Assembly: GCA_964106915.2 (NCBI GenBank)
Contig: OZ066915.1
DNA: 64,000 nt
Direction: 5' to 3' (one strand)
DNA from: Podarcis gaigeae
Lineage: Eukaryota
Of this stretch, positions 6,793 through 62,900 are shown piece after piece. Position 1 is the first letter of the stretch. The number at the start of each line of letters is the position of its first letter. The notes under the pieces were generated by a model. That model was not told where the DNA came from, did no database searches, and was given only the letters and a program-made list of their open reading frames with translations. The translations under genes were made by a program, and so were the position numbers.

Positions 6793-7122
6793 GGCTATGT
6801 ATGATATATAATGACTTTGTCTTTTGTCTTCTTTCCATGCTGTCTCTTTATATTGTTCTATTTTGGCGCAACACCCTCTGAAAATGTCATCCAATCAAAA
6901 TGCACTATGAAAAATCCATCTGTCCATCCATGAACTGGTCTGTGTGTCCATGCTAATGAATATTTCTGAACTTCCCTGCCCTGATCCCTCTCCCATCACC
7001 AAAAATGAAATCACTGCCTTCTGCATTTCTCCGTTTGCTGGTTGGAACTCAACTTGCGGTATTAAAACACCCACCCTTCCCTGACCTTCTCTGATCCTCT
7101 CCATCTCAATGTTTGCATCTAG
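6793..7122 (+). promoter_or_regulatory. Splicing control region of microexon 31a: ~330-nt AG-exclusion zone, YCAY (NOVA-type) cluster, UGC near the 3' splice site
   Basis: No AG dinucleotide before the acceptor; repeated TCAT/CCAT/TCAC at about 6887-7015; tttgcatctag. Confidence 0.7.
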
Positions 7123-7128
7123 GATCCG
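7123..7128 (+). CDS. CACNA1A: CACNA1A 6-nt alternative microexon 31a (IVS3-S4 linker), GATCCG = Asp-Pro
   Basis: tttgcatctag|GATCCG|gttggt; no AG from 6793 to 7120; YCAY cluster upstream, TGCATG at 7194-7199; one base different from the mammalian AATCCG (NP) exon at the same gene position. Confidence 0.85.
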
Positions 7129-9321
7129 GTTGGTTTGATTACTTTCTCAAGCCTAAGTGCCTTACATTAATCAAAAGCATCTTCTTGGCGCATTGCATGA
7201 TCTTTTGAGCCAAAGATGCCTGCAGTTTACTGGGCAGCTTCCGCTTTTAGTCCCCCCACTTACCCCATATTGTGTCACTTATTTTATTCAGATTCACATA
7301 TGGCTTCCAGTAACCCCATAGCAGGGATGTGGTATATATGCTGGCTGTTTGCCATAATAAACATTGATTGATTGAGGGATATGGTATAGTAATACTGCAG
7401 CCTTGGTGATGCCAATCTCTGAAGAGATGATTGCATTTAATCTAAGACTTGCATCAGTATGGATAGGCTTTCTAAAAGGATATGGTGGTAGATAGAAAGC
7501 TGTATCTGCAAGTTGCTGGGTTCTGACCCAGGGCCAGTGTCAGTTTCTGTCTGGGGGGAAACCTGGGATGGGAATTCAACATGCAAGTACCTTACTTGAT
7601 GACATACAAAACCTGATGACAGTTTGCATGGGTGGAGCATCCACCACAGTTGAAATACTACAGATACTTTGCATATCATCTGGCATCACCTCCAGGCACA
7701 TAGTTTTTGCAGTGTGTGCGCAGTCAAATAGAAGACCTAAAAATCCCACTTGTCAATAGCTATCTGAACAAGTACAGAAAAGCCCTGCACCCCCAGCTTC
7801 ATTCTGCGCGCACAGGCATACCCATTCACTCAAAACTTTTCACATTTAACCTTCCCTTAATGCATACAACTTTAGCTGGGTATCCACTTACCACCTAAAC
7901 ACAACACACGCAAACACATTTCCTCACACATGAACTGACCCTAAGGTCCTCTCAGTGATATTAGTATTCTCCATATACTTTCAGCCATGCACAGACAACC
8001 TCTGCTTTGGTCAGTTGAAGTAGAACAATTCCTTAGAAGAAGTAAAATATCATTATAACTATGGAAATTAGCCCAAGCCCATTTAGGAGTATTGAGAAGG
8101 ATATTAACATCCCTTTTCCTGAGAGTCAGTTGTGGAGGGTGAGTCAAAGAGAAATCCTTAATTTTATTTCTCTGGGCCACATTCAGTCTTACTTTTCTAA
8201 CAAACACCGATACTCCTCTTAAGATTAGGGTAGACATTAATTTTGAAAGATTGCATGTGCGTCCGTTTCACATATTTAACAAAATCTCAAGAGGAATCTG
8301 TTGAGAAAACGTCTTCAAAATGAAACAGACATATATATAATAAATATAAATCAAATTGAAACAGACACACATCACAGACACAATGCATAGCTTGAAGCAT
8401 TGATGCCTCCTATACTGGTTGGCTGACTTGGTACAATGATCTAAATATTCAGTTGCTGAAAGGACATTGCTACTTAAAGTCCAGCTTTTCTGAGGGAGGG
8501 TAAATTGACAGTTTGACTGAAGAAATCTTGGCCTGTAGTGAAGCTTAGTGATAAAGTGTTCAGAAGAAGGGAGGCAGAATGAATGGTACAGAGTAGGAAA
8601 TGGACTGAAAGCAGGAAATCTGAAGGAAGGGTTGATGAGCTAGGAAAAAGCAGCAACGGGAGTTGAGGCAAAAAAGAAAAGGAGGAGGTGGCAGTGAAGA
8701 TATTCACCAATGTGTAAGATCAAGAGGCAGGTGTATGGTGTATGTTTGGGGCAGGAGAGTGCTAGGACTGTTAGCCAAAAGAGACAGGATGAATAAAAAG
8801 TGTGGGGCAAAGTAGAGTGGACTGAAAAAATGCAATAAAATTTGTAGGTGGAGACATGGAACGGAACTGAAGAAAGTAGGATACAAGAAGAAAGCTGAGC
8901 TAGGACTGTGGATTTTGTCTGAAAGGAAATGGGCAGGCAAGAGAGGTTTGGAGGACTAGAGACAGTGGAACCGGGGGGGGGGGCGTGTTTCTAGATCTAG
9001 TCTGACACAGGTTTCCACCGGTTAAATAGTTTACTTTCACTGCATCATTGTGTCCTGGAATAAGATTCAAAAGGCAAGGGGCAGAGCTGAAATATATATA
9101 TTGGTTTAAACAAAAGAGCTAAATGTTTTGGCTGAAAGATTGTCAACTTAAGATATTGACCTTAGAATAGGCTTAAAAAGTAATGTAGGAAGTGAACTTT
9201 GGAATGCAGGTGGTTAATAGGAAAGAGAGAATGGTGTGTGGCACCATTCCTAATGGTCTGTGTGGGCATATATTTCCAACTGGAAATGGGTGTGGGTCCC
9301 CTGCCTTTCTCTCTTTCCCTC

Positions 9322-11299: not shown

Positions 11300-11878
11300 T
11301 GAGATTTGAAGTTGTGGGTGGTTGAGAGAGAAAGGGAGGGAAGTAGTAGGAGTGCAGAAAGTTTAGGAGATTATAGCTAGAGACATCCAACCTCATCCAT
11401 CTACCTGTTTATTTCTCTGTTCATTCACCACCTCCTATCATGCACTTTGAATCATGAATACTTCCTTTCATGTTGTTGAAGTTGAATCATGTTTCATGAG
11501 TAGCTTTCCATTAACTCACCCTTTTGCATGGGTAAGTAATTACTGCACGATTTCTGTAGTCACGATGTGGCAGGGATTGGAGGAAGGAGTGATAGAGTCT
11601 ACAACAGCCTTCTTCAACATGGTGCCCTCCAGTTGACTCCCATCCTCCTTCGTTCCTGACCATTGACCATACTGACTGAGGCTGATGGTAGTTGTAGGGC
11701 AGCAGGATGGGGAAGACTGGCCTACAAGCAATCTCTTTCATTGCTCTTTCATTCAGTGACAGCAATCAGTTTGTAAGAAGAAGGGAGCCATATTCCCAGT
11801 AAAACAAGTGTGGTACACACCCACAAAATGTGAAACTTAAAAAAATAATAATGTATGCTCATGTTTTTCCCTCACTAG

Positions 11879-24206: not shown

Positions 24207-24471
24207 CATCACATCTAGTTTGGTGCTGATAATGATTTATAAAGCTCGTTCTGAGCATTTAATTCAGTATTTAACCAGTATGCAATTAGAGTTCTCACTT
24301 GCTATGCATTTTTTTCATAATTGAAGTTTTTCTGTTGTATGTATCCTAGAGATCACTTTTGATCTACACCACTTTCCTTAACCATGGCATAGGTATGGCC
24401 ACTTGGTGCTGCATTCATATGGCAGCAGCTGATAATGCAATTTAGTACAGAAGCATAAATTTAGGAAACAA

Positions 24472-50957: not shown

Positions 50958-51413
50958 GGGAAGGGCCATAGCTCAGTAGCAGAGCATCTGCTTTGCATAT
51001 AGAAAGTCCTGTGTTCAATTCCTAGCATTTCCAGGTAGAGCTGGAAGAGAAGCTTGTCTGAAATCCTGAAGATCTGCTGCCAATCAATATAGGCAATACT
51101 TAAATATATATATATATATATATATATATAGGCAATACTTACGGTAGATTGCTGCTCTGACTCAGTACAGTGGTACCTTGAGTTACAGACACTTCAGGTT
51201 ACAGACACTTCAGGTTACAGACTCTGCTAACCTCGGCTTAAGAACTTTGCTTCAGGATGAGAACAGAAATCGCGCAGTGGCGGCAGCAGCAGGAGGCCCC
51301 ATTAGCGAAAGTGGTACCTCAGGTTAAGAACAGTTTCAGGTTAAGAACGGACCTCCAGAACGAATTAAGTTCTTAACCCGAGGTACCACTGTATAGGGCA
51401 GTCCTATATTCCT
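50958..51413 (+). mobile_element. tRNA-derived squamate SINE (Squam2-like, tentative) interrupted by (TA)n and a MITE
   Basis: A-box-like TAGCTCAGTAG, B-box-like GTTCAATTCC; tail ...ggcagtcctatattcct. Confidence 0.65.
51168..51391. mobile_element. Tc1/mariner-type MITE
   Basis: TIRs CAGTGGTACCTTGAGTTA / TAACCCGAGGTACCACTG, TA target duplication. Confidence 0.85.
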
Positions 51414-54096: not shown

Positions 54097-55338
54097 GTCA
54101 GGTTGCAGGACCAGCAGGAGTAAACCCTAGAGACAGAGGCTTCAGTCCTTTAGCTACTTCCTTCAGAATAGCTGCAATCTTTGCAACTGTCACAATTCCA
54201 GAGAGTACCGTATTTTTTGCACCATAGCACTCACTTTTTTCCTCCTAGAAAGTAAGGGGAAATGTCTGTGCATGTTATGGAGCGAATGCCTGCGGGTGGC
54301 GGGGGGGGGATCTGCTGCAGTCATGAGCAGAGGATCCATGGTTCCCCTTCCTTCCCTCCTCCGTGGTTACAAAGCATGGATCCACATGGATCCTCAGGAT
54401 TTTTGCATTGGGCTACTCCAAACTCACTGTCAGATCACATGTCTGTGGCCACAGCATGAACCACAAAAATCATATATCCACTATTTCGTTTAGAATATTT
54501 TTTTTCTTGTTTTCCTCCTCTAAAAACTACGTGCGTGTTATGGTCTGGTGTGTGTTATAGAGCGAAAAATACGGTAATTCGAATTAGGCAGCCTTAGAAT
54601 TATGGTAGCTTGTCAAAGTATATATGTAAAGATCTAAGGCTCCTGCTTGGCAAGCATCTTGAGGTGTGAGTCTCTCAATAACTGGTGAATACATTTGATG
54701 TACTCAGTATAATTGTACAGGTATATGCAGGTTTTCTTTTTGTTGCACTATAGTTCCAGAGTGCCCCTCCAGGTGGTAGTAATGTGGTAACACTGGGAAG
54801 AATCACATAACTAATAAAGAAGAACTGTGTAGACAGTTCACTATAAATCTGCCGCAGATGCACTATTACTGTGTCAAAGACATGTTGCAGAAAACACCTA
54901 CACAGATAAACAAAAAGTATGTAGGGGCCTTAGTCTTTAAAGTGTTACAAAACTGTTCACTGATTTTGTTGCAGCATGTGAAATGTGCAAATGCATACTT
55001 GTGCTCTTTTAGAGGCGTTGCATAATGGACCTTTATAATAGCACATAAGGTTTGTGAGAAATGTAAGATATGTCTCAGGTACTTTCATTCTTGCTTTCTT
55101 TGCAGATCAGTCCTTCCCCAAACTATAGGTCAAAAGACTGTGTATGGGATCCAGAAGCACTTTTGGAGCATTTTGTCAGCTGAGAGCCTACTTTAAATTG
55201 AGAACTCACTGGAAACCAATTCTGATCCCTCTATGAAGGGACTTCTGCAAGCCAAAATAATTATGATGTGGGTGATCCATGAACTGGATCTCCACAGTTA
55301 ATAACAGCAATAGAGGGGTTGTTCATATTGCAACCGCA

Positions 55339-56225
55339 CAGTGGCGTAGCGTGGGGGGTGCCAGGGGTGCCGGCCGCACCAGGCGCAACATGGGTGGGGG
55401 GCGCACTCGCACTAGCAGCTCTCTGCCCCTACTAAAATCCACGGGTTAGGGAGCCCGCGCTCGCTCGGCTTGGCGAGGAGGTCGCGGAAGGGGGAGAGCG
55501 AAGCCTTCTGCTGCGGGCAAAAAAAGGAGAGGAAGCCGGGCGGGCGGGCTGGCTGGCGGGGGTCTGGCTGCGCCTGCTGCTGCCGTTGCCGCTGCTGCCG
55601 GGCTTTGACAGCTTGGCCAAGCGGAGGGAGAGGAGCTTTATGGTAATTGCAGCTCTCTCTCCACTGGCCGCCTGGGTAGTGAGCCAAGCCGAGCAGGGAG
55701 TCTGGCGAGGGGGCGGGAAGAGACTTTCCCCCCTTTTTTCCACCTCGCCTGGTCAAAAAGGAGAGCGGAGTCTCCTCAGGGCGCCCTCAGGCAGGGCAGG
55801 GCAAGGCAAGCAGAGCGAGGAGGAGAGAGAGGGGAAGGGGGGGGGGAAGCAGCCAGGAAACGCCGCAGTGTGGAGGGGGAATCAATTAAGGAGAGAAAGC
55901 GAAAAGCCTTGGAGAAAGGGAAAAAAGGAAAGAAAAGAGGCAGCTCCGGGAGAGCGCGGGGGAAAGAGAAGCCTCGCTGCTGCTGCTGCTTGGGAGAGTA
56001 AATTACTGTACTTGCCTTGCCCCGGGTTAGGGGGCGCAGATTACTTGCCTTGCCCCGGGTGCTGATAACCCACGCTACGCCGCTGGCGTAGCGTGGGGGG
56101 TGCAGGGGGGCCGGCCGCACTGGGCGCAACATATGGGGTTAGGGTTAGGGGGCGCAAATCCATGGGTTAGGGGGCGCAAATTACTTGCCTTGCCCCGGGT
56201 GCTGACAACCCATGCTACGCCACTA
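55339..56225. mobile_element. GC/CpG-rich non-autonomous hAT-like element, head-to-tail dimer
   Basis: TIRs CAGTGGCGTAGCGTGGG / CCCATGCTACGCCACTA; 8-bp TSD CAACCGCA / CAACTGCA; fused internal TIR pair at 56069-56097. Confidence 0.8.
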
Positions 56226-56544
56226 CAACTGCAGCACTAGGAGTGTGTGTGTGTGTGTATGTGTAGATTAAACCCTTTAGCATTGTTTTTCTAATTAATA
56301 TAAGCAAACTGAAATTTTGCTTGCCATGCAGTGCAAAGGCTTAATTAATCTTGCCCCCATGGGGCAAATAGCTTGGGGAGGACAATTTTAATTGGGGGAG
56401 TGGTGGCATGGGGGTTTTTTTTAAAGCCTCCCCGGTGCTGCAGTTCTGTTCCCCCCTTCCCACACACACACTCCTCCTGCCCTCTGCTCTAAAGTTGCTG
56501 TTAACCTCCAAAGCTGATACTTGCACTGCAGGGCAAAACATGTA

Positions 56545-56786
56545 CAGTGGTACCTCGGGTTACATACGCTTCAGGTCACATACGCTTCAGGTTACAGACT
56601 CCACTAACCCAGAAATAGTACCTCGGGTTAAGAACTTTGCTTCAGGATGAGAACAAAAATCGCATGGTGGTGGTGCAGCAGCAGCGGGAGGCCCCATTAG
56701 CTAAAGTGGTGCTTCAGGTTAAGAACAGTTTCAGGTTAAGAACAGGCCTCCGGAACGAATTAAGTACATAACCAGAGGTACCACTG
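56545..56786. mobile_element. Tc1/mariner-type MITE, same family as 51168-51391
   Basis: TIRs CAGTGGTACCTCGGGTTA / TAACCAGAGGTACCACTG, TA TSD, shared internal sequence. Confidence 0.85.
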
Positions 56787-57234: not shown

Positions 57235-57482
57235 GGCTGGGCACGGACCTCAGCATGACCACACAGTCAGGTGACCTACCTCCCAAAGAAAGAGACCAAG
57301 AACGAGGCAGGCCAAAGGACCGGAAACACCATCACCATCACCACCACCATCATCACCACCACACATCTTCTGACAAAGAGCGGTACTCACAAGAGAGGCA
57401 CGAATATAGCCGGCCTCGCTCCAGAGATCGACGTTGGTCTCGCTCGCCCAGTGAGGGCCGAGACCACATGCCTCACAGGCAG
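57235..57482 (+). CDS. CACNA1A: CACNA1A exon 46 with His12 tract: [30 protein letters not shown](H)12[40 protein letters not shown]
   Basis: ctggcag|GG CTG...CAG|gtgggt; 248 nt. Confidence 0.95.
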
Positions 57483-58690: not shown

Positions 58691-59968
58691 AAAAACAAGA
58701 GAAGAAGAGACAATTAAACTAGTTTAAGTCTTTGGTATAGATATGTTTATATATGCAGAAGCTTCCATTGCTGAGATCCAGAAAATATGGGTGTGGATGA
58801 CAATCCCTTCTGAATCAACATTACAACTACACACAAGGGCTCATTTCCAGTAAATGGTACAGAGGAAACTCCCTATTGCATTTTGCCCCAAGTGATATCC
58901 TCCTTTCCTCCCATTTCAGGAATTGCTTCCTCAAAAGATATCCTCTTGCTTAATACCTGTCCACCCTTCTTCACAGACACAGCAGGCACTTCACACACAG
59001 TCTTGTCTGATCCTGATCACCTATTGAGTTACACACACACACAATCACAATGTGTGTGCACAGACAAGTATTGTGATGTCTGTGAAACCCATTTACAATG
59101 TCCCTGAGGCATCACAACAGGAAACCACAAGTTCCTGTGGCTTGGACAAGGCTGCTTAGGCTATGTTCCTGCTAATTATACACATATTGTGGACAACATA
59201 TTTCATGGCACTTATATAGAGAAAATGGGTGGAAAATTCTGTCACCTTTATTACTGGAGTACATCCTCTTAATTGAATAGTATCAAAAAAATTCATTTCA
59301 TTCAAAGCTGAGTTCACACCTAAGGAAGTATGGGTTTGCAGGGTTTGATTTTCACAGGGCTTAGTCTGGATTCATTCTATTGCAGTGTTTGTATGTCTAC
59401 AGCTTTGGAACTGGAGCAATGCCAGGACTGCCAATTTAGTAGTGCAGTTGGCTCCCTCCATATATTAACCATATATTAATGCAGCATGTTACCCCATCTC
59501 CATTCGAAATATTATATCCTGTAATGGGCCAAGAAAACAAAGGCTATCAAACTCACATTGAAGCTCACAACTACATTCCTTATTTATATTCATAGTGTGG
59601 TACAAAAGCCAAAGAAATAATAAAGCCTACCACTTTAATTATAGAGAAAATTGAATAACATAAGGGTAGAGCCTCAAGACAGGGGTTGTGCCCAGCTTTA
59701 TGTGAACTGCATCAAAATTTTATTGGGTGAATGAGAATACAATTACTCGATGAGACTCTTCTTAAGGTCCTTTATTCCTTTGTTTTCCATTTATTCCCCG
59801 CACTGCTGCACGCCGCCCCTCCGTTATCACACACAATGTCATTTTCTTTGTTCCTATTTGTTTCCTTTGGACAATTTGGACGCTTTACTCGGGGTCTCCT
59901 GGCCAATCTGCCTTTATTTACATGTTTATTTCTGTATCCGTTGTGCTTGGCTCTGCTGTCACGGCGAG

Positions 59969-59980
59969 GGGCGGGCGCAG
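59969..59980 (+). CDS. Candidate 12-nt alternative microexon in intron 46 (GRAQ)
   Basis: ctctgctgtcacggcgag|GGGCGGGCGCAG|gtaaga; AG-free 59767-59966; phase 0/0 compatible; TGCATG at 60241-60246. Confidence 0.55.
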
Positions 59981-62900
59981 GTAAGATGGTTGGTGAGCAG
60001 AGAACAAAAATTCAAACCAATCCAGCGGATGGCCCTGCCTAGCTCGCTGGCCTATTTCTCCAGTGTCTGTGATGTGACCCCTTTATTGTTACACTGGTGG
60101 AACTGAACTCTCTGGGGTTTGTGAATCTGGAAAGTTTGGAATGAAGCTGCACCTGAAGAGACAGGCACACATGTAAGCTGTGCATATCACATCCAAACAA
60201 AACAAGAAAAAAGCAGAAATACATGCATAAACTGTAGGCATGCATGCAATGAGCGTATATAGGACACAGGATATATGGCAGGCATGGGGAACATGTGGCC
60301 TTGCAGATGTCAGCTCCCATCTTCCCTGATCATGGGCCATGCTAGCTTAAGCTAATGGAAGTTGTTGTCTACCAATAGCTGGAAGGCTTCATATTCCTCA
60401 TCCCTGGTATATGGGAGAGGGATGCCCAAGGGTATGGCAAGACTGAGGTACTGATAGATTTTCTCCAGCAGGGGATCAGTCAAATAGCAGTTTCAGGAGA
60501 TACTTAAATTGGAATGGTGAAGTGTTGGATCCCTTCCTCTAGTGTAATGGGCCCAAGCTATGTCCCTACAGCTGCTTATTTGTTTAAAGAAGCATCAGGA
60601 TATACAGTCACAGATCTCCTGACCTAGTCCAGTTTAGCCCTAAAATTCTATCCTAGGAAATTTCAAATTATGCAGTAATATATTTTGAACATTAGGCATC
60701 TTCTCATAAAATTTACTTGATTTTCAGTAATGTGTTCAGACTGCAAATTCTGGTTCTTCTGCAAAATTTAGTAAGGAAAAGAGGACACCAAAAGCATTAT
60801 GTAGAATACGTATTATGGAGTTTGAACTGGGATAAGAAGCTATATTGGGAATGGAGATACAGTCTATGATCAGTGGGACCCCCTTGAATTGTCAACAGAA
60901 ATTGCCCCTATGTTTTAAAGTTTTTCCTGCAGCTCTGAGGGATTCCTCTTGTACATCCCCAAAATAAGAAGTTGAGAATCAAAGGATTCTTGCAGAATAC
61001 CTATGTTTGGTTCTAGAGATCTAGGTTCTGTGGCATGCAGCTTTGGTCTCTTGTAGATGGTGGTCTTCAGATACACAGACACATACCAAAAATAGATACA
61101 GACACATATGATACACACACACAAAAAAAACACCCCACACAGATTTTGAGTCTTGTGGCATACAAAAAGTTGTAAGTACAACTGATACTGAGAGATGCAG
61201 GGCATGCGTGTGTGTTTTTAATACAAAAGGATGTATATAAATTGTGTAAGTAAATATCCACAGTATACTAAAATACACAGTACAGGCATGGCATAACAAA
61301 TAATTTGCAGGTTTGTATGGCAAAAATAGGCATTCATAGATGCATGTATGGTGCAACATGATACAGAAAGAGATATTTCATTGAAATACGTATGTGTGAA
61401 ATTCCCGGCAATGTGGTTATGTACATATACATGCACGCACATGAGCACATTCAAAGCATACAAAAACTTACTTTGTAAACCTAGGATACCTTTCCTAATT
61501 ATGATTCCTGTTTGGTTTGGTAGGCTTTTCCTTCCTGGTGCTACTTCAATTACTCTCTCTGTCTTGGTTTCTCTCTGTCTCTTTCTCTCCCTCTCTCCTC
61601 TGGTCTTCTTCTGACCATGAATCACTGATAATCAGCGCAAGAAAACTGTAGCATGGCAGCCACTTTCAAGTACCAAGCAGCATAGAGCTGCTTCAGTGGT
61701 TAGCAACACATTCTCCCTTAAAATGTTTCCATATTAGATTGAGGTTAATTATTAAAAAAAAAAACCCACCAGCAAGCAGAATTCTCTTCTATTTTAACTT
61801 GTCCTTCATATTTAACTCTCATGGGCTGGAGTTCTCTCAGACTTCTACAGTAAGGCCTTCTTCTTTTTTTACTATGCCATGAACCATTATTGTCCTCCTG
61901 TCTGAACAGACCTCAAGACCACCTCCAGCTCCCCTTTGAGGTAAGTACTTCATTCTCTTCCTTTTTTAAAAAAGTATAATTCCAGAGATAACTTTCAACA
62001 ACAATGGACTTAACCTCTCAGCTCTTTGAGATGCAGTCTCCCTTTTCTCCTTCAGATTTATTCCATCTTCTTAGGTCTATAGGTTTCCAGTTCAGCCTAG
62101 ATTCTTCCCAAAGACTATTCACCATGTGTGTGACACAACTGCTCACCTAAGGCAGATTAGTTTATACATCTAATTGGGCCTTCTTCATTTATCTGATTCT
62201 TGTCACCTTTCGCCAGGCTTATGTAAATTGCAATGCCTGCACATCTGGGTTTTGGTAATGTTCAGATCTCTCTTAAATAAGTTTCCACAGTTCCTGCTTG
62301 GATATTGTGATATAGTCTTGTGACACTGTCCTGCTGCACTTGAAGAGCAGCTTTTACCACGCTTTTACCACGCTCCACCTTTTGAGGAGTGACTGCTGAC
62401 TGGCTCACAGATTCACTTTATTCACAGCTATGGAGCTACTTCCTTTTCATTGCTGGCATAGAGTGGCTGGTCACTTGAGCGATGCCACAGAAGCCTCTTC
62501 TCACAACTTGGTGCAGGTTTTTCAGGAGCCTCTCTCCAGCGTTCTAGTTCTATAAGGCTGAACTCAAGCTAGATTTCCACTACTCTCAAACTACTCTTCT
62601 GAAGTTCTCTTGTCCCAATTGGCTGATCACAGATGCAAAATGATTTCATTTGAATGACCAACTTGGCTTCACCTTCCTGGGTGATTTACAGAGTCTATGT
62701 GTACACATCTATCACTTTTTATCATCAACAGCTGGAGTTTAGGGGTCTTATTATCCTGTTGAGGGCCATCCAAATGGGGTCTTTTATTACTAGAGAGGTG
62801 CCAACTCCCATGAAGGAAACAGCTGCCTCTGCATGTGTGACTACATCATTGTCTTTTCACTTTTTGTTGGTTCAGCCAATACTAGACACTATCAGACGCT

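What the first reader, a model, noticed from the sequence alone, without database searches (positions are those of the whole stretch)
59767..60290. Candidate undescribed 12-nt neural microexon (Gly-Arg-Ala-Gln) between exons 46 and 47
Seen: exactly 200 nt without AG (59767-59966), pyrimidine-rich, with UGC motifs near the acceptor. The first AG (GAG) is followed by GGG CGG GCG CAG and a strong CAG|GTAAGA donor. Length is a multiple of 3, phase 0/0 matches the end of exon 46, local CpGs are retained, and TGCATG/GCATG occur at 60238-60285. This is the same architecture as the two known regulated small exons in this window (31a and 44). I know of no such exon in mammalian CACNA1A. Inference: it would give ...HRQ-GRAQ-(exon 47) and, since it also ends in CAG, could influence the exon 47 acceptor choice that decides long vs short C-terminus. 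The rare GAG acceptor is the weak point.
Basis: partly seen in the sequence, partly recalled or inferred. Interest (0 to 1): 0.8.

Follow-up and report, generated by a model that had tools for sequence, protein, structure and literature searches.

The report
Conserved splice module in Cav2.1 intron 46
A tiny exon-like unit in the last long intron of a lizard brain calcium-channel gene is strongly conserved in geckos, an anole and birds but missing in mammals, so it is very probably functional; whether it is really spliced into the message is still not shown.

Summary
The unit is not a chance motif. It is the best-conserved piece of Cav2.1 intron 46: 86% identity to Gekko over 388 nt, against 83% for coding exon 46. 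Its core (UGC-bearing upstream tract, GAG, CAG|GTAAG) is also kept in three bird orders, a divergence of about 280 My by my estimate.

It is absent from the short intron 46 of a seal and a kangaroo rat, and from Amia.

In squamates the unit is 12 nt and in frame. Podarcis and Gekko differ by one synonymous change (CGG to AGG). A RefSeq model of Anolis sagrei joins this same donor to exon 47 in the Gly-Arg-Ala-Gln frame.

In all three birds the unit is 11 nt, so a frame-preserving insert is not its conserved property across sauropsids.

No transcript or protein with exon 46 joined to the unit was found.

Best reading (about 0.45): a regulated, SRRM4/RBFOX-type neuronal micro-exon. Rivals are a non-productive decoy or recursive site, an alternative 5' exon, and a DNA-level element.

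The parts
57235..57482 (+). Cav2.1 exon 46. It ends CAG|GTGGGT in phase 0.
   Evidence: Translation and exon boundaries were read. One search matches it to P/Q-type alpha-1A exon fragments (P0002, Polypterus, is named as such). It is 83.3% identical to Gekko L002 145-604.
59756..60250 (+). Conserved intronic element that contains the exon-like unit.
   Evidence: Local blastn of window intron 46 against Gekko kuhli L002 gives 59815-60199 = L002 5855-6241, 85.8% over 388 nt. A further match covers 59756-59793 at 84%. Alignments A1 and A2. The orthologous Gekko stretch has no Rfam family match.
59767..59966 (+). AG-free, pyrimidine-rich tract (AG exclusion zone).
   Evidence: It is 200 nt here, 60 nt in Gekko, 68 in Rissa, 76 in Bubo and 104 in Theristicus.
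59917..59921 (+). Candidate branch point: TTTAC, with the A at 59920, about 48 nt before the AG.
   Evidence: Read from the alignment. The motif is TTTAC in Podarcis, TGTAC in Gekko and TTCAC in the birds. The distance fits the 45-47 nt median reported for neural microexons (PMC12871342). This is an inference and was not tested.
59944..59956 (+). Two TGC (UGC) motifs, at -23 and -13 from the acceptor.
   Evidence: They are kept at -23/-24 and -13/-15 in all five genomes. UGC lying between the branch point and the AG is the SRRM4 signature.
59967..59968 (+). Acceptor AG, in the weak GAG context.
   Evidence: Invariant in five genomes, inside an identical 17-nt block GCTGTCACGGCGAGGGG. 12 of the 20 nt upstream are pyrimidines.
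59969..59980 (+). 12-nt exon-like unit GGGCGGGCGCAG (Gly-Arg-Ala-Gln).
   Evidence: Gekko has GGGAGGGCGCAG, which encodes the same peptide. Anolis sagrei XP_060615822.1 reads ...GEGRAQ|GSSSVSG. The birds have the 11-nt GGGTGGCCCAG.
59981..59986 (+). Strong donor GTAAGA.
   Evidence: CAG|GTAAG is invariant in five genomes. It is one of only two AGGTAAG sites on the + strand of the window.
59993..59998 (+). Second in-frame donor GTGAGC, 12 nt further on. Using it would give a 24-nt exon.
   Evidence: Read. It is kept in Gekko but not in birds. Its use is untested.
60127..60153 (+). Downstream conserved 27-nt block, role unknown.
   Evidence: 93% identical to Rissa L001 18866-18892. Also present in Gekko, Bubo and Theristicus. 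No consistent pairing partner was found.
60238..60286 (+). (U)GCAUG cluster, RBFOX-type, 257-301 nt after the donor.
   Evidence: GCATGCATG is kept in Gekko at +249/+253. None occurs within 320 nt in Rissa or Bubo.

Best explanation
The unit is a selectively maintained splice module in intron 46 of the P/Q-type calcium-channel gene (Cav2.1, CACNA1A) of sauropsids. It is most likely a regulated neuronal micro-exon.

Proposed mechanism, all inferred:
- A distal branch point lies about 48 nt upstream, and the GAG acceptor is weak, so the exon stays silent by default.
- In neurons, SRRM3/4 bound to the UGC motifs at -13 and -23, together with the near-perfect U1 site CAG|GUAAGA, allows definition of the tiny exon.
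- In squamates, RBFOX bound to the downstream GCAUG cluster adds to inclusion.

Expected products:
- In squamates, inclusion adds 12 nt (Gly-Arg-Ala-Gln) between the end of exon 46 (...HRQ) and exon 47.
- In birds the unit is 11 nt and shifts the frame. With the GGCAG-including exon 47 acceptor this gives a stop after a few codons, a short tail. With the distal acceptor it restores the long tail with two extra residues.

Shown: the sequence features, their conservation, and the absence of the element in two mammals and Amia. Inferred: actual inclusion, the regulators, and the protein consequences.
For: - All features are present at the stated coordinates.
- The arrangement occurs once in the window, against 0.075 expected per strand.
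- It is the best-conserved part of intron 46: 85.8% over 388 nt to Gekko, against 83.3% for exon 46.
- It is the top hit between the lizard and gull introns: 77% over 79 nt, E = 8e-9, plus a collinear 27-nt block.
- The same core occurs in an owl and an ibis.
- Between birds the element is 90% identical, against about 71% for the surrounding intron.
- The GAG, the UGC motifs and CAG|GTAAG are invariant in five genomes.
- The 12-nt unit differs by one synonymous change between Podarcis and Gekko.
- RefSeq XP_060615822.1 of Anolis sagrei joins this donor to exon 47 in the same frame.
- The three other longest AG-free tracts on this strand of the window precede the known regulated exons e31a, e44 and e37b.
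- Published microexon features match: UGC between branch point and AG, an extended branch-point-to-AG distance, conserved flanks of more than 75 nt, and downstream TGCATG (PMC12871342; bioRxiv 10.1101/2024.09.17.613571; PMC4317164).
- The GAG acceptor has a better pyrimidine context (12 of 20) than the CAG next to the donor (7 of 20).
Against: - No transcript evidence was obtained.
- None of about 60 partial Cav2.1 C-terminal proteins or transcript fragments carries an insert at the exon 46/47 joint. This includes four ibis isoforms that do vary at e44.
- In three bird orders the unit is 11 nt, so a frame-preserving peptide is not what is conserved.
- GAG is the rarest acceptor context.
- The Anolis model reads through the upstream tract as a first exon, not as a 12-nt cassette.
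- The 200-nt AG-free length is not conserved.
Confidence: 0.45

Rival explanations
1. The unit is a non-productive splice module: a decoy exon or a recursive (zero-length) site. The conserved CAG|GTAAG with its upstream tract engages the spliceosome to control how or when intron 46 is removed. It might also affect which exon 47 acceptor is used. It leaves no trace in the mature message.
For: - The 11-nt versus 12-nt difference between birds and squamates, each fixed within its clade, is harmless under this reading.
- CAG|GTAAG is invariant, and exon 46 also ends in CAG, so a strong donor would be regenerated after a first splicing step.
- The interior of the unit is the most variable part of the core.
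- No mature product with an insert was found.
- Recursive splicing has been reported over a wider range of intron sizes than first thought (PMC10156609, abstract as listed).
Against: - The 20 nt before the CAG are G-rich, with only 7 of 20 pyrimidines, which makes a poor acceptor.
- An invariant GAG sits 11-12 nt upstream and would be met first.
- The host intron is short: about 4.5 kb in the gull, with the site only 0.8 kb from exon 46. Classical vertebrate recursive sites lie in very long introns (from my own knowledge; PMC5126111 appeared in the listing but was not opened).
- Described decoy exons are usually longer than this (from my own knowledge).
Confidence: 0.25
2. The unit is an alternative 5' exon from an internal start site in intron 46. 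A transcript begins in the pyrimidine-rich tract and is spliced from the 59980 donor to exon 47, as drawn in the Anolis sagrei RefSeq model. The result is a short mRNA for the channel's distal C-terminal tail.
For: - XP_060615822.1 (P0121, 295 aa) starts inside the element and joins exon 47 at this donor.
- The 11-nt versus 12-nt difference is harmless if the exon is untranslated.
- A GC-box-like GGGGNGGG sits in the core.
Against: - The ATG of the Anolis model is 59 nt before the donor in Podarcis and Gekko, against 60 nt in Anolis. It is therefore out of frame in two of three squamates. The predicted N-terminus looks like an ab initio extension.
- A different annotation of Gekko picks another upstream exon.
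- There is no CpG island: GC is 0.39-0.40 across 58-62 kb.
- Conservation is as strong for more than 200 nt downstream of the donor as it is upstream, and the GAG and UGC motifs are invariant. That pattern fits a cassette exon better than a promoter.
Confidence: 0.1
3. The unit is a DNA-level regulatory element, such as an intronic enhancer with Sp/KLF-type and E-box-like sites. Its splice-like motifs would then be incidental or used only weakly.
For: - The conserved block of about 450 nt is longer than needed for one tiny exon.
- The variable base in GGGG[C/A/T]GG fits a degenerate GC/GT box.
- The 27-nt downstream block has no assigned RNA role.
Against: - The order branch-point-like motif, UGC tract, AG, short gap, perfect donor, in the sense orientation, is unlikely by chance.
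- Each of these pieces is invariant in five genomes.
- The gene has other small regulated exons with the same layout.
Confidence: 0.12

Closest known systems
SRRM4/SRRM3 (eMIC)-dependent neural microexons of vertebrates (3-27 nt)
   Same: The unit shares these features: tiny size, UGC motifs between a distal branch point and the AG, a weak acceptor, a strong donor, highly conserved intronic flanks, a downstream UGCAUG in squamates, and a host gene that is a neuronal ion channel.
   Different: Inclusion has not been observed. The acceptor context is GAG. The length is 12 nt in squamates but 11 nt in birds, whereas conserved neural microexons normally keep their length and frame. The unit is absent from the mammals examined.
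Known small regulated exons of Cav2.1: e31a (6 nt, NP in mammals) and e44 (36 nt)
   Same: They are in the same gene and the same window, and each is preceded by an unusually long AG-free tract (328 and 206 nt). e31a is an established brain micro-exon (PMC4317164).
   Different: Those exons are documented in mammals. e44 is also seen to be optional in ibis isoforms. The present unit lies in intron 46, where I know of no described exon, and the papers I searched gave none.
Exon 47 dual acceptor of Cav2.1 (with or without GGCAG, setting the long or short C-terminus)
   Same: It is the same junction. The TAG|GGCAG|TAG arrangement is conserved in Gekko, gull and ibis. The bird 11-nt unit has the same frame effect (+2) as the 5-nt GGCAG.
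   Different: The dual acceptor is an alternative 3' splice site of exon 47 itself. The present unit is a separate element 2.5 kb (Podarcis), 5.4 kb (Gekko) or 0.6-0.8 kb (birds) downstream of exon 46.
Recursive splice sites and RS-exons
   Same: An AG is juxtaposed to GTAAG, and a donor would be regenerated after joining to an exon that ends in CAG.
   Different: The host intron is short, the pyrimidine tract directly before that AG is poor, and a conserved AG lies upstream.

Membership tests
Neural (SRRM4-type) cassette microexon | Exon of 3-27 nt bounded by an AG acceptor and a GT donor on the sense strand of an intron | tested here: met
   59967-68 AG, 59969-59980, 59981 GT. The boundaries are invariant in five genomes.
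Neural (SRRM4-type) cassette microexon | Length a multiple of 3 and conserved between species | tested here: inconclusive
   12 nt in Podarcis and Gekko, and the GRAQ peptide in the Anolis model. 11 nt in Rissa, Bubo and Theristicus.
Neural (SRRM4-type) cassette microexon | UGC motif between branch point and AG, with an extended branch-point-to-AG region | tested here: met
   TGC at -13/-15 and -23/-24 in all five genomes. The AG-free zone is 60-200 nt.
Neural (SRRM4-type) cassette microexon | Highly conserved intronic flanks | tested here: met
   85.8% over 388 nt to Gekko, above exon 46 at 83.3%. Bird-to-bird identity is 90%, against about 71% background.
Neural (SRRM4-type) cassette microexon | Inclusion in neural transcripts (junction reads on both sides) | not testable with these tools
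No protein or fragment with an insert was found. Full-length proteins were out of reach of the length filter.
Neural (SRRM4-type) cassette microexon | Dependence on SRRM3/4 (or RBFOX) | not testable with these tools
   This needs a minigene or a knock-down experiment.
Recursive splice site (zero-length exon) | Juxtaposed acceptor and donor, YAG|GTAAG | tested here: met
   CAG|GTAAG is invariant.
Recursive splice site (zero-length exon) | Pyrimidine tract directly upstream of that AG, and no competing AG between the branch point and it | tested here: not met
   Only 7 of 20 nt are pyrimidines, in a G-rich stretch. A conserved GAG lies 11-12 nt upstream.
Recursive splice site (zero-length exon) | Very long host intron | tested here: not met
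   Intron 46 is about 4.5 kb in Rissa, about 3.5 kb in Theristicus and about 10.9 kb in Gekko.
Alternative first exon / internal promoter | Transcript start inside the element | not testable with these tools
   The only support is the computed model XP_060615822.1.
Alternative first exon / internal promoter | Conserved start codon and frame for the predicted N-terminus | tested here: not met
   From the ATG to the donor is 59 nt in Podarcis and Gekko, against 60 nt implied in Anolis.

The most novel reading that the evidence does not exclude
A micro-exon specific to sauropsids sits at the junction that decides the long or short C-terminal tail of Cav2.1. It has been fixed at 12 nt in squamates, giving an in-frame Gly-Arg-Ala-Gln insert. 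It has been fixed at 11 nt in birds, where it would act as a frame switch that swaps which exon 47 acceptor yields the long tail. The same conserved splice module would then be used for two different coding outcomes.
Probability: 0.15. Interest if true: 0.75.

Novelty: new member of a known kind. Interest (0 to 1): 0.5.

Why it matters
The exon 46/47 junction sets whether Cav2.1 carries its long distal tail. In humans that tail holds the polyglutamine tract of spinocerebellar ataxia type 6 and the synaptic scaffolding motifs.

A deeply conserved extra splice module at exactly this junction, present in reptiles and birds and absent in mammals, would add a lineage-specific layer of control, or a small insert, at a functionally important point of a major presynaptic channel.

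It also gives a concrete, cheap test. One RT-PCR across exons 46-47 in lizard and chicken brain would decide between a real micro-exon and a non-productive splice element.

Tried and rejected
It found only genomic single-exon fragments that read into the intron. Some look mammalian (P0001, P0003, P0004, later P0035, P0083, and the orang-utan P0108). I left these alone.
- **Full-length Cav2.1 isoforms.** These could not be reached. The joined peptide of exon 46, the unit and exon 47 was therefore never searched.
- **Locus look-ups that failed.** A. sagrei (P0121), P0078 and Sphaerodactylus (P0126) are not on record. Polypterus and the lungfish returned no DNA.
- **Duplication of the exon 47 acceptor region.** Rejected: alignment score 21 against a shuffle mean of 18.3, with 53 of 300 shuffles reaching it.
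- **Interspersed repeat.** Rejected: the core has no other copy in the window. Only 60285-60400, outside the core, matches repeats at about 50.3, 34.5 and 51.8 kb.
- **Known RNA family.** None matched the Gekko ortholog.
- **Conserved pairing between the downstream 27-nt block and the acceptor region.** No consistent structure was found.
- **The 200-nt AG-free length as evidence in itself.** Downgraded: the minus strand has a 197-nt run, and Gekko has only 60 nt.
Full report
**Setting.** The window carries the 3' part of a Cav2.1 (CACNA1A, P/Q-type calcium channel alpha-1A) gene on the + strand.
- I located exons 31 to 46 by translation.
- Exon 46 is 57235-57482. It ends CACAGGCAG|GTGGGT in phase 0.
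- Its translation matches alpha-1A exon fragments, including one named as such from Polypterus.
- Exon 47 is not in the window. No Ser/Pro/Arg-rich frame exists in 60-64 kb, so intron 46 is longer than 6.5 kb here.
- Earlier notes of this scan call this genome a wall lizard, Podarcis. I use that name but did not test it.

**The observation.**
- There is an exactly 200-nt AG-free, 69.5% pyrimidine tract at 59767-59966.
- The first AG sits in a GAG context at 59967-68.
- Twelve bases follow, GGGCGGGCGCAG (59969-59980).
- The donor is CAG|GTAAGA, which matches 8 of 9 consensus positions.
- TGC lies at -13 and -23, four CpGs lie around the unit, and GCATG/TGCATG lie at 60238-60286.

The claimed family likeness is also real. 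The four longest AG-free tracts on this strand are 328, 206, 200 and 163 nt.
- The first ends at TAG|GATCCG|GTTGGT between exons 31 and 32. This is e31a, here Asp-Pro rather than Asn-Pro.
- The second ends at the 36-nt e44.
- The fourth ends at e37b.

Tract length alone is weak evidence, because the opposite strand has a 197-nt run. The whole arrangement is an AG after at least 60 AG-free nt, then 3-30 nt, then AG|GTAAG. It occurs once on both strands, against 0.075 expected per strand in Markov simulations.

**Conservation, the main new result.** I worked beside it.
- An exhaustive protein search with exon 42 (window:41046-41159) gave a partial gull protein, P0025 from Rissa tridactyla.
- Word searches with P0025 and with P0121 gave about 60 partial Cav2.1 C-termini.
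- Their genomic loci could be fetched for Rissa (L001), Gekko kuhli (L002), Weddell seal (L003), Dipodomys (L004), Bubo scandiacus (L005), Amia (L006) and Theristicus (L007).

Squamates:
- Against Gekko, the lizard intron aligns poorly except for one block. Window 59815-60199 matches L002 5855-6241 at 85.8% over 388 nt.
- That exceeds the 83.3% of the alignment spanning exon 46 and its immediate flanks (461 nt).
- In Gekko the block lies midway between exons 46 and 47.

Birds:
- Against the gull intron, the best hit in the whole intron is the candidate itself. Window 59908-59985 matches L001 18689-18765 at 77%, E = 8e-9. A collinear 27-nt block follows, 60127-60153.
- The owl and the ibis have the same core.
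- Between gull and owl the element is 90% identical, against about 71% for the surrounding intron.

Shared features in all five genomes:
- a 17-nt block GCTGTCACGGCGAGGGG that contains the GAG;
- CAG|GTAAG;
- TGC motifs at -13/-15, -23/-24 and -58;
- a YNYAC motif about 48 nt upstream;
- an AG-free zone of at least 60 nt.

Other taxa and controls:
- The two mammals have an intron 46 of only 0.5-0.7 kb without the element. Amia lacks it too.
- The Gekko ortholog matches no Rfam family.
- The core is not a repeat and not a copy of the exon 47 acceptor.

**What speaks for a coding micro-exon.**
- In Gekko the unit is GGGAGGGCGCAG. This is again 12 nt and again Gly-Arg-Ala-Gln, and the single difference is a synonymous CGG to AGG.
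- The RefSeq model XP_060615822.1 of Anolis sagrei (P0121) reads ...GEGRAQ|GSSSVSG. It joins exactly this donor to exon 47 in this frame.
- The layout fits published features of SRRM4/RBFOX-regulated micro-exons. These are UGC between a distal branch point and the AG, weak core sites, conserved flanks of more than 75 nt, and downstream TGCATG.
- GCATGCATG is kept in Gekko.
- The GAG acceptor has the better pyrimidine context: 12 of 20, against 7 of 20 for the CAG beside the donor.

**What speaks against it, or complicates it.**
- In all three bird orders the unit is 11 nt, GGGTGGCCCAG, and it is clearly under constraint there. A frame-preserving insert is therefore not the property conserved across sauropsids.
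- The exon 47 dual acceptor TAG|GGCAG|TAG is conserved in Gekko and birds. From this I infer two outcomes for the 11-nt unit. With the proximal acceptor it gives a stop after a few codons. With the distal acceptor it restores the long frame with two extra residues. This is arithmetic on the sequence, not evidence of use.
- The Anolis model treats the upstream tract as a first exon. Its ATG is 59 nt from the donor in Podarcis and Gekko, not 60, so it is out of frame there. The N-terminus is probably a computed extension, and the model is only weak evidence that the donor is used.
- None of the partial proteins or transcript-derived fragments has an insert after ...HRQ. Four ibis isoforms that differ at e44 do not differ here.
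- This absence is weak evidence.

**Verdict.**
- The element is real and functional with high probability, about 0.9.
- A regulated micro-exon is the best single reading, about 0.45.
- A non-productive decoy or recursive splice site is next, about 0.25. It is favoured by the 11/12-nt difference. It is disfavoured by the short intron, the G-rich stretch before the CAG and the conserved upstream GAG.
- An alternative 5' exon has about 0.1, and a DNA-level element about 0.12.
- I found no description of an exon in Cav2.1 intron 46 in the papers searched.
- If inclusion is confirmed, this is a new member of a known kind, with an unusual length difference between clades.

Noticed in passing
window 7121-7134: The 6-nt exon e31a reads GATCCG (Asp-Pro) here instead of the mammalian Asn-Pro. 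It is flanked by TAG| and the weak donor |GTTGGT, and is preceded by the longest AG-free tract of the window (6793-7120, 328 nt).
   Followed up: partly
L001 20860-22513 (Rissa tridactyla): A 1654-nt AG-free, C-rich repetitive tract runs right up to the exon 47 acceptor in the gull.
   Followed up: no
L002 ~11446-11475; L003, L004 and L006 at the ends of their intron 46: The 30 nt before the exon 47 acceptor (TTGATTTCCTTTGTTTC..TTTTCGTGTAG) are nearly identical in gecko, seal, kangaroo rat and Amia. The GGCAG|TAG dual acceptor that follows them was read in gecko, gull and ibis. This is a very deeply conserved acceptor region.
   Followed up: no
window 51148-51376 and 56587-56771: Two copies of the same interspersed repeat give similar translated frames on the + strand. 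A GC-rich stretch lies at about 55300-56250 in intron 45.
   Followed up: no
window 61270-61466: A 197-nt stretch has no CT on the + strand, which makes it AG-free on the minus strand. I used it as the chance control for long AG-free tracts.
   Followed up: partly
L005 ~24339-24346 (Bubo scandiacus): The annotated owl protein P0090 ends ...RQP followed by a stop. The gene call ends at 24346, and the alignment shows TTAG|CCCTGA there, just downstream of the conserved element. This looks like a tiny terminal coding piece, probably an annotation artefact.
   Followed up: partly
window 59993-59998: A second, in-frame donor GTGAGC lies 12 nt after the first and is conserved in Gekko. Using it would make a 24-nt exon that adds four more codons without a stop.
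   Followed up: no
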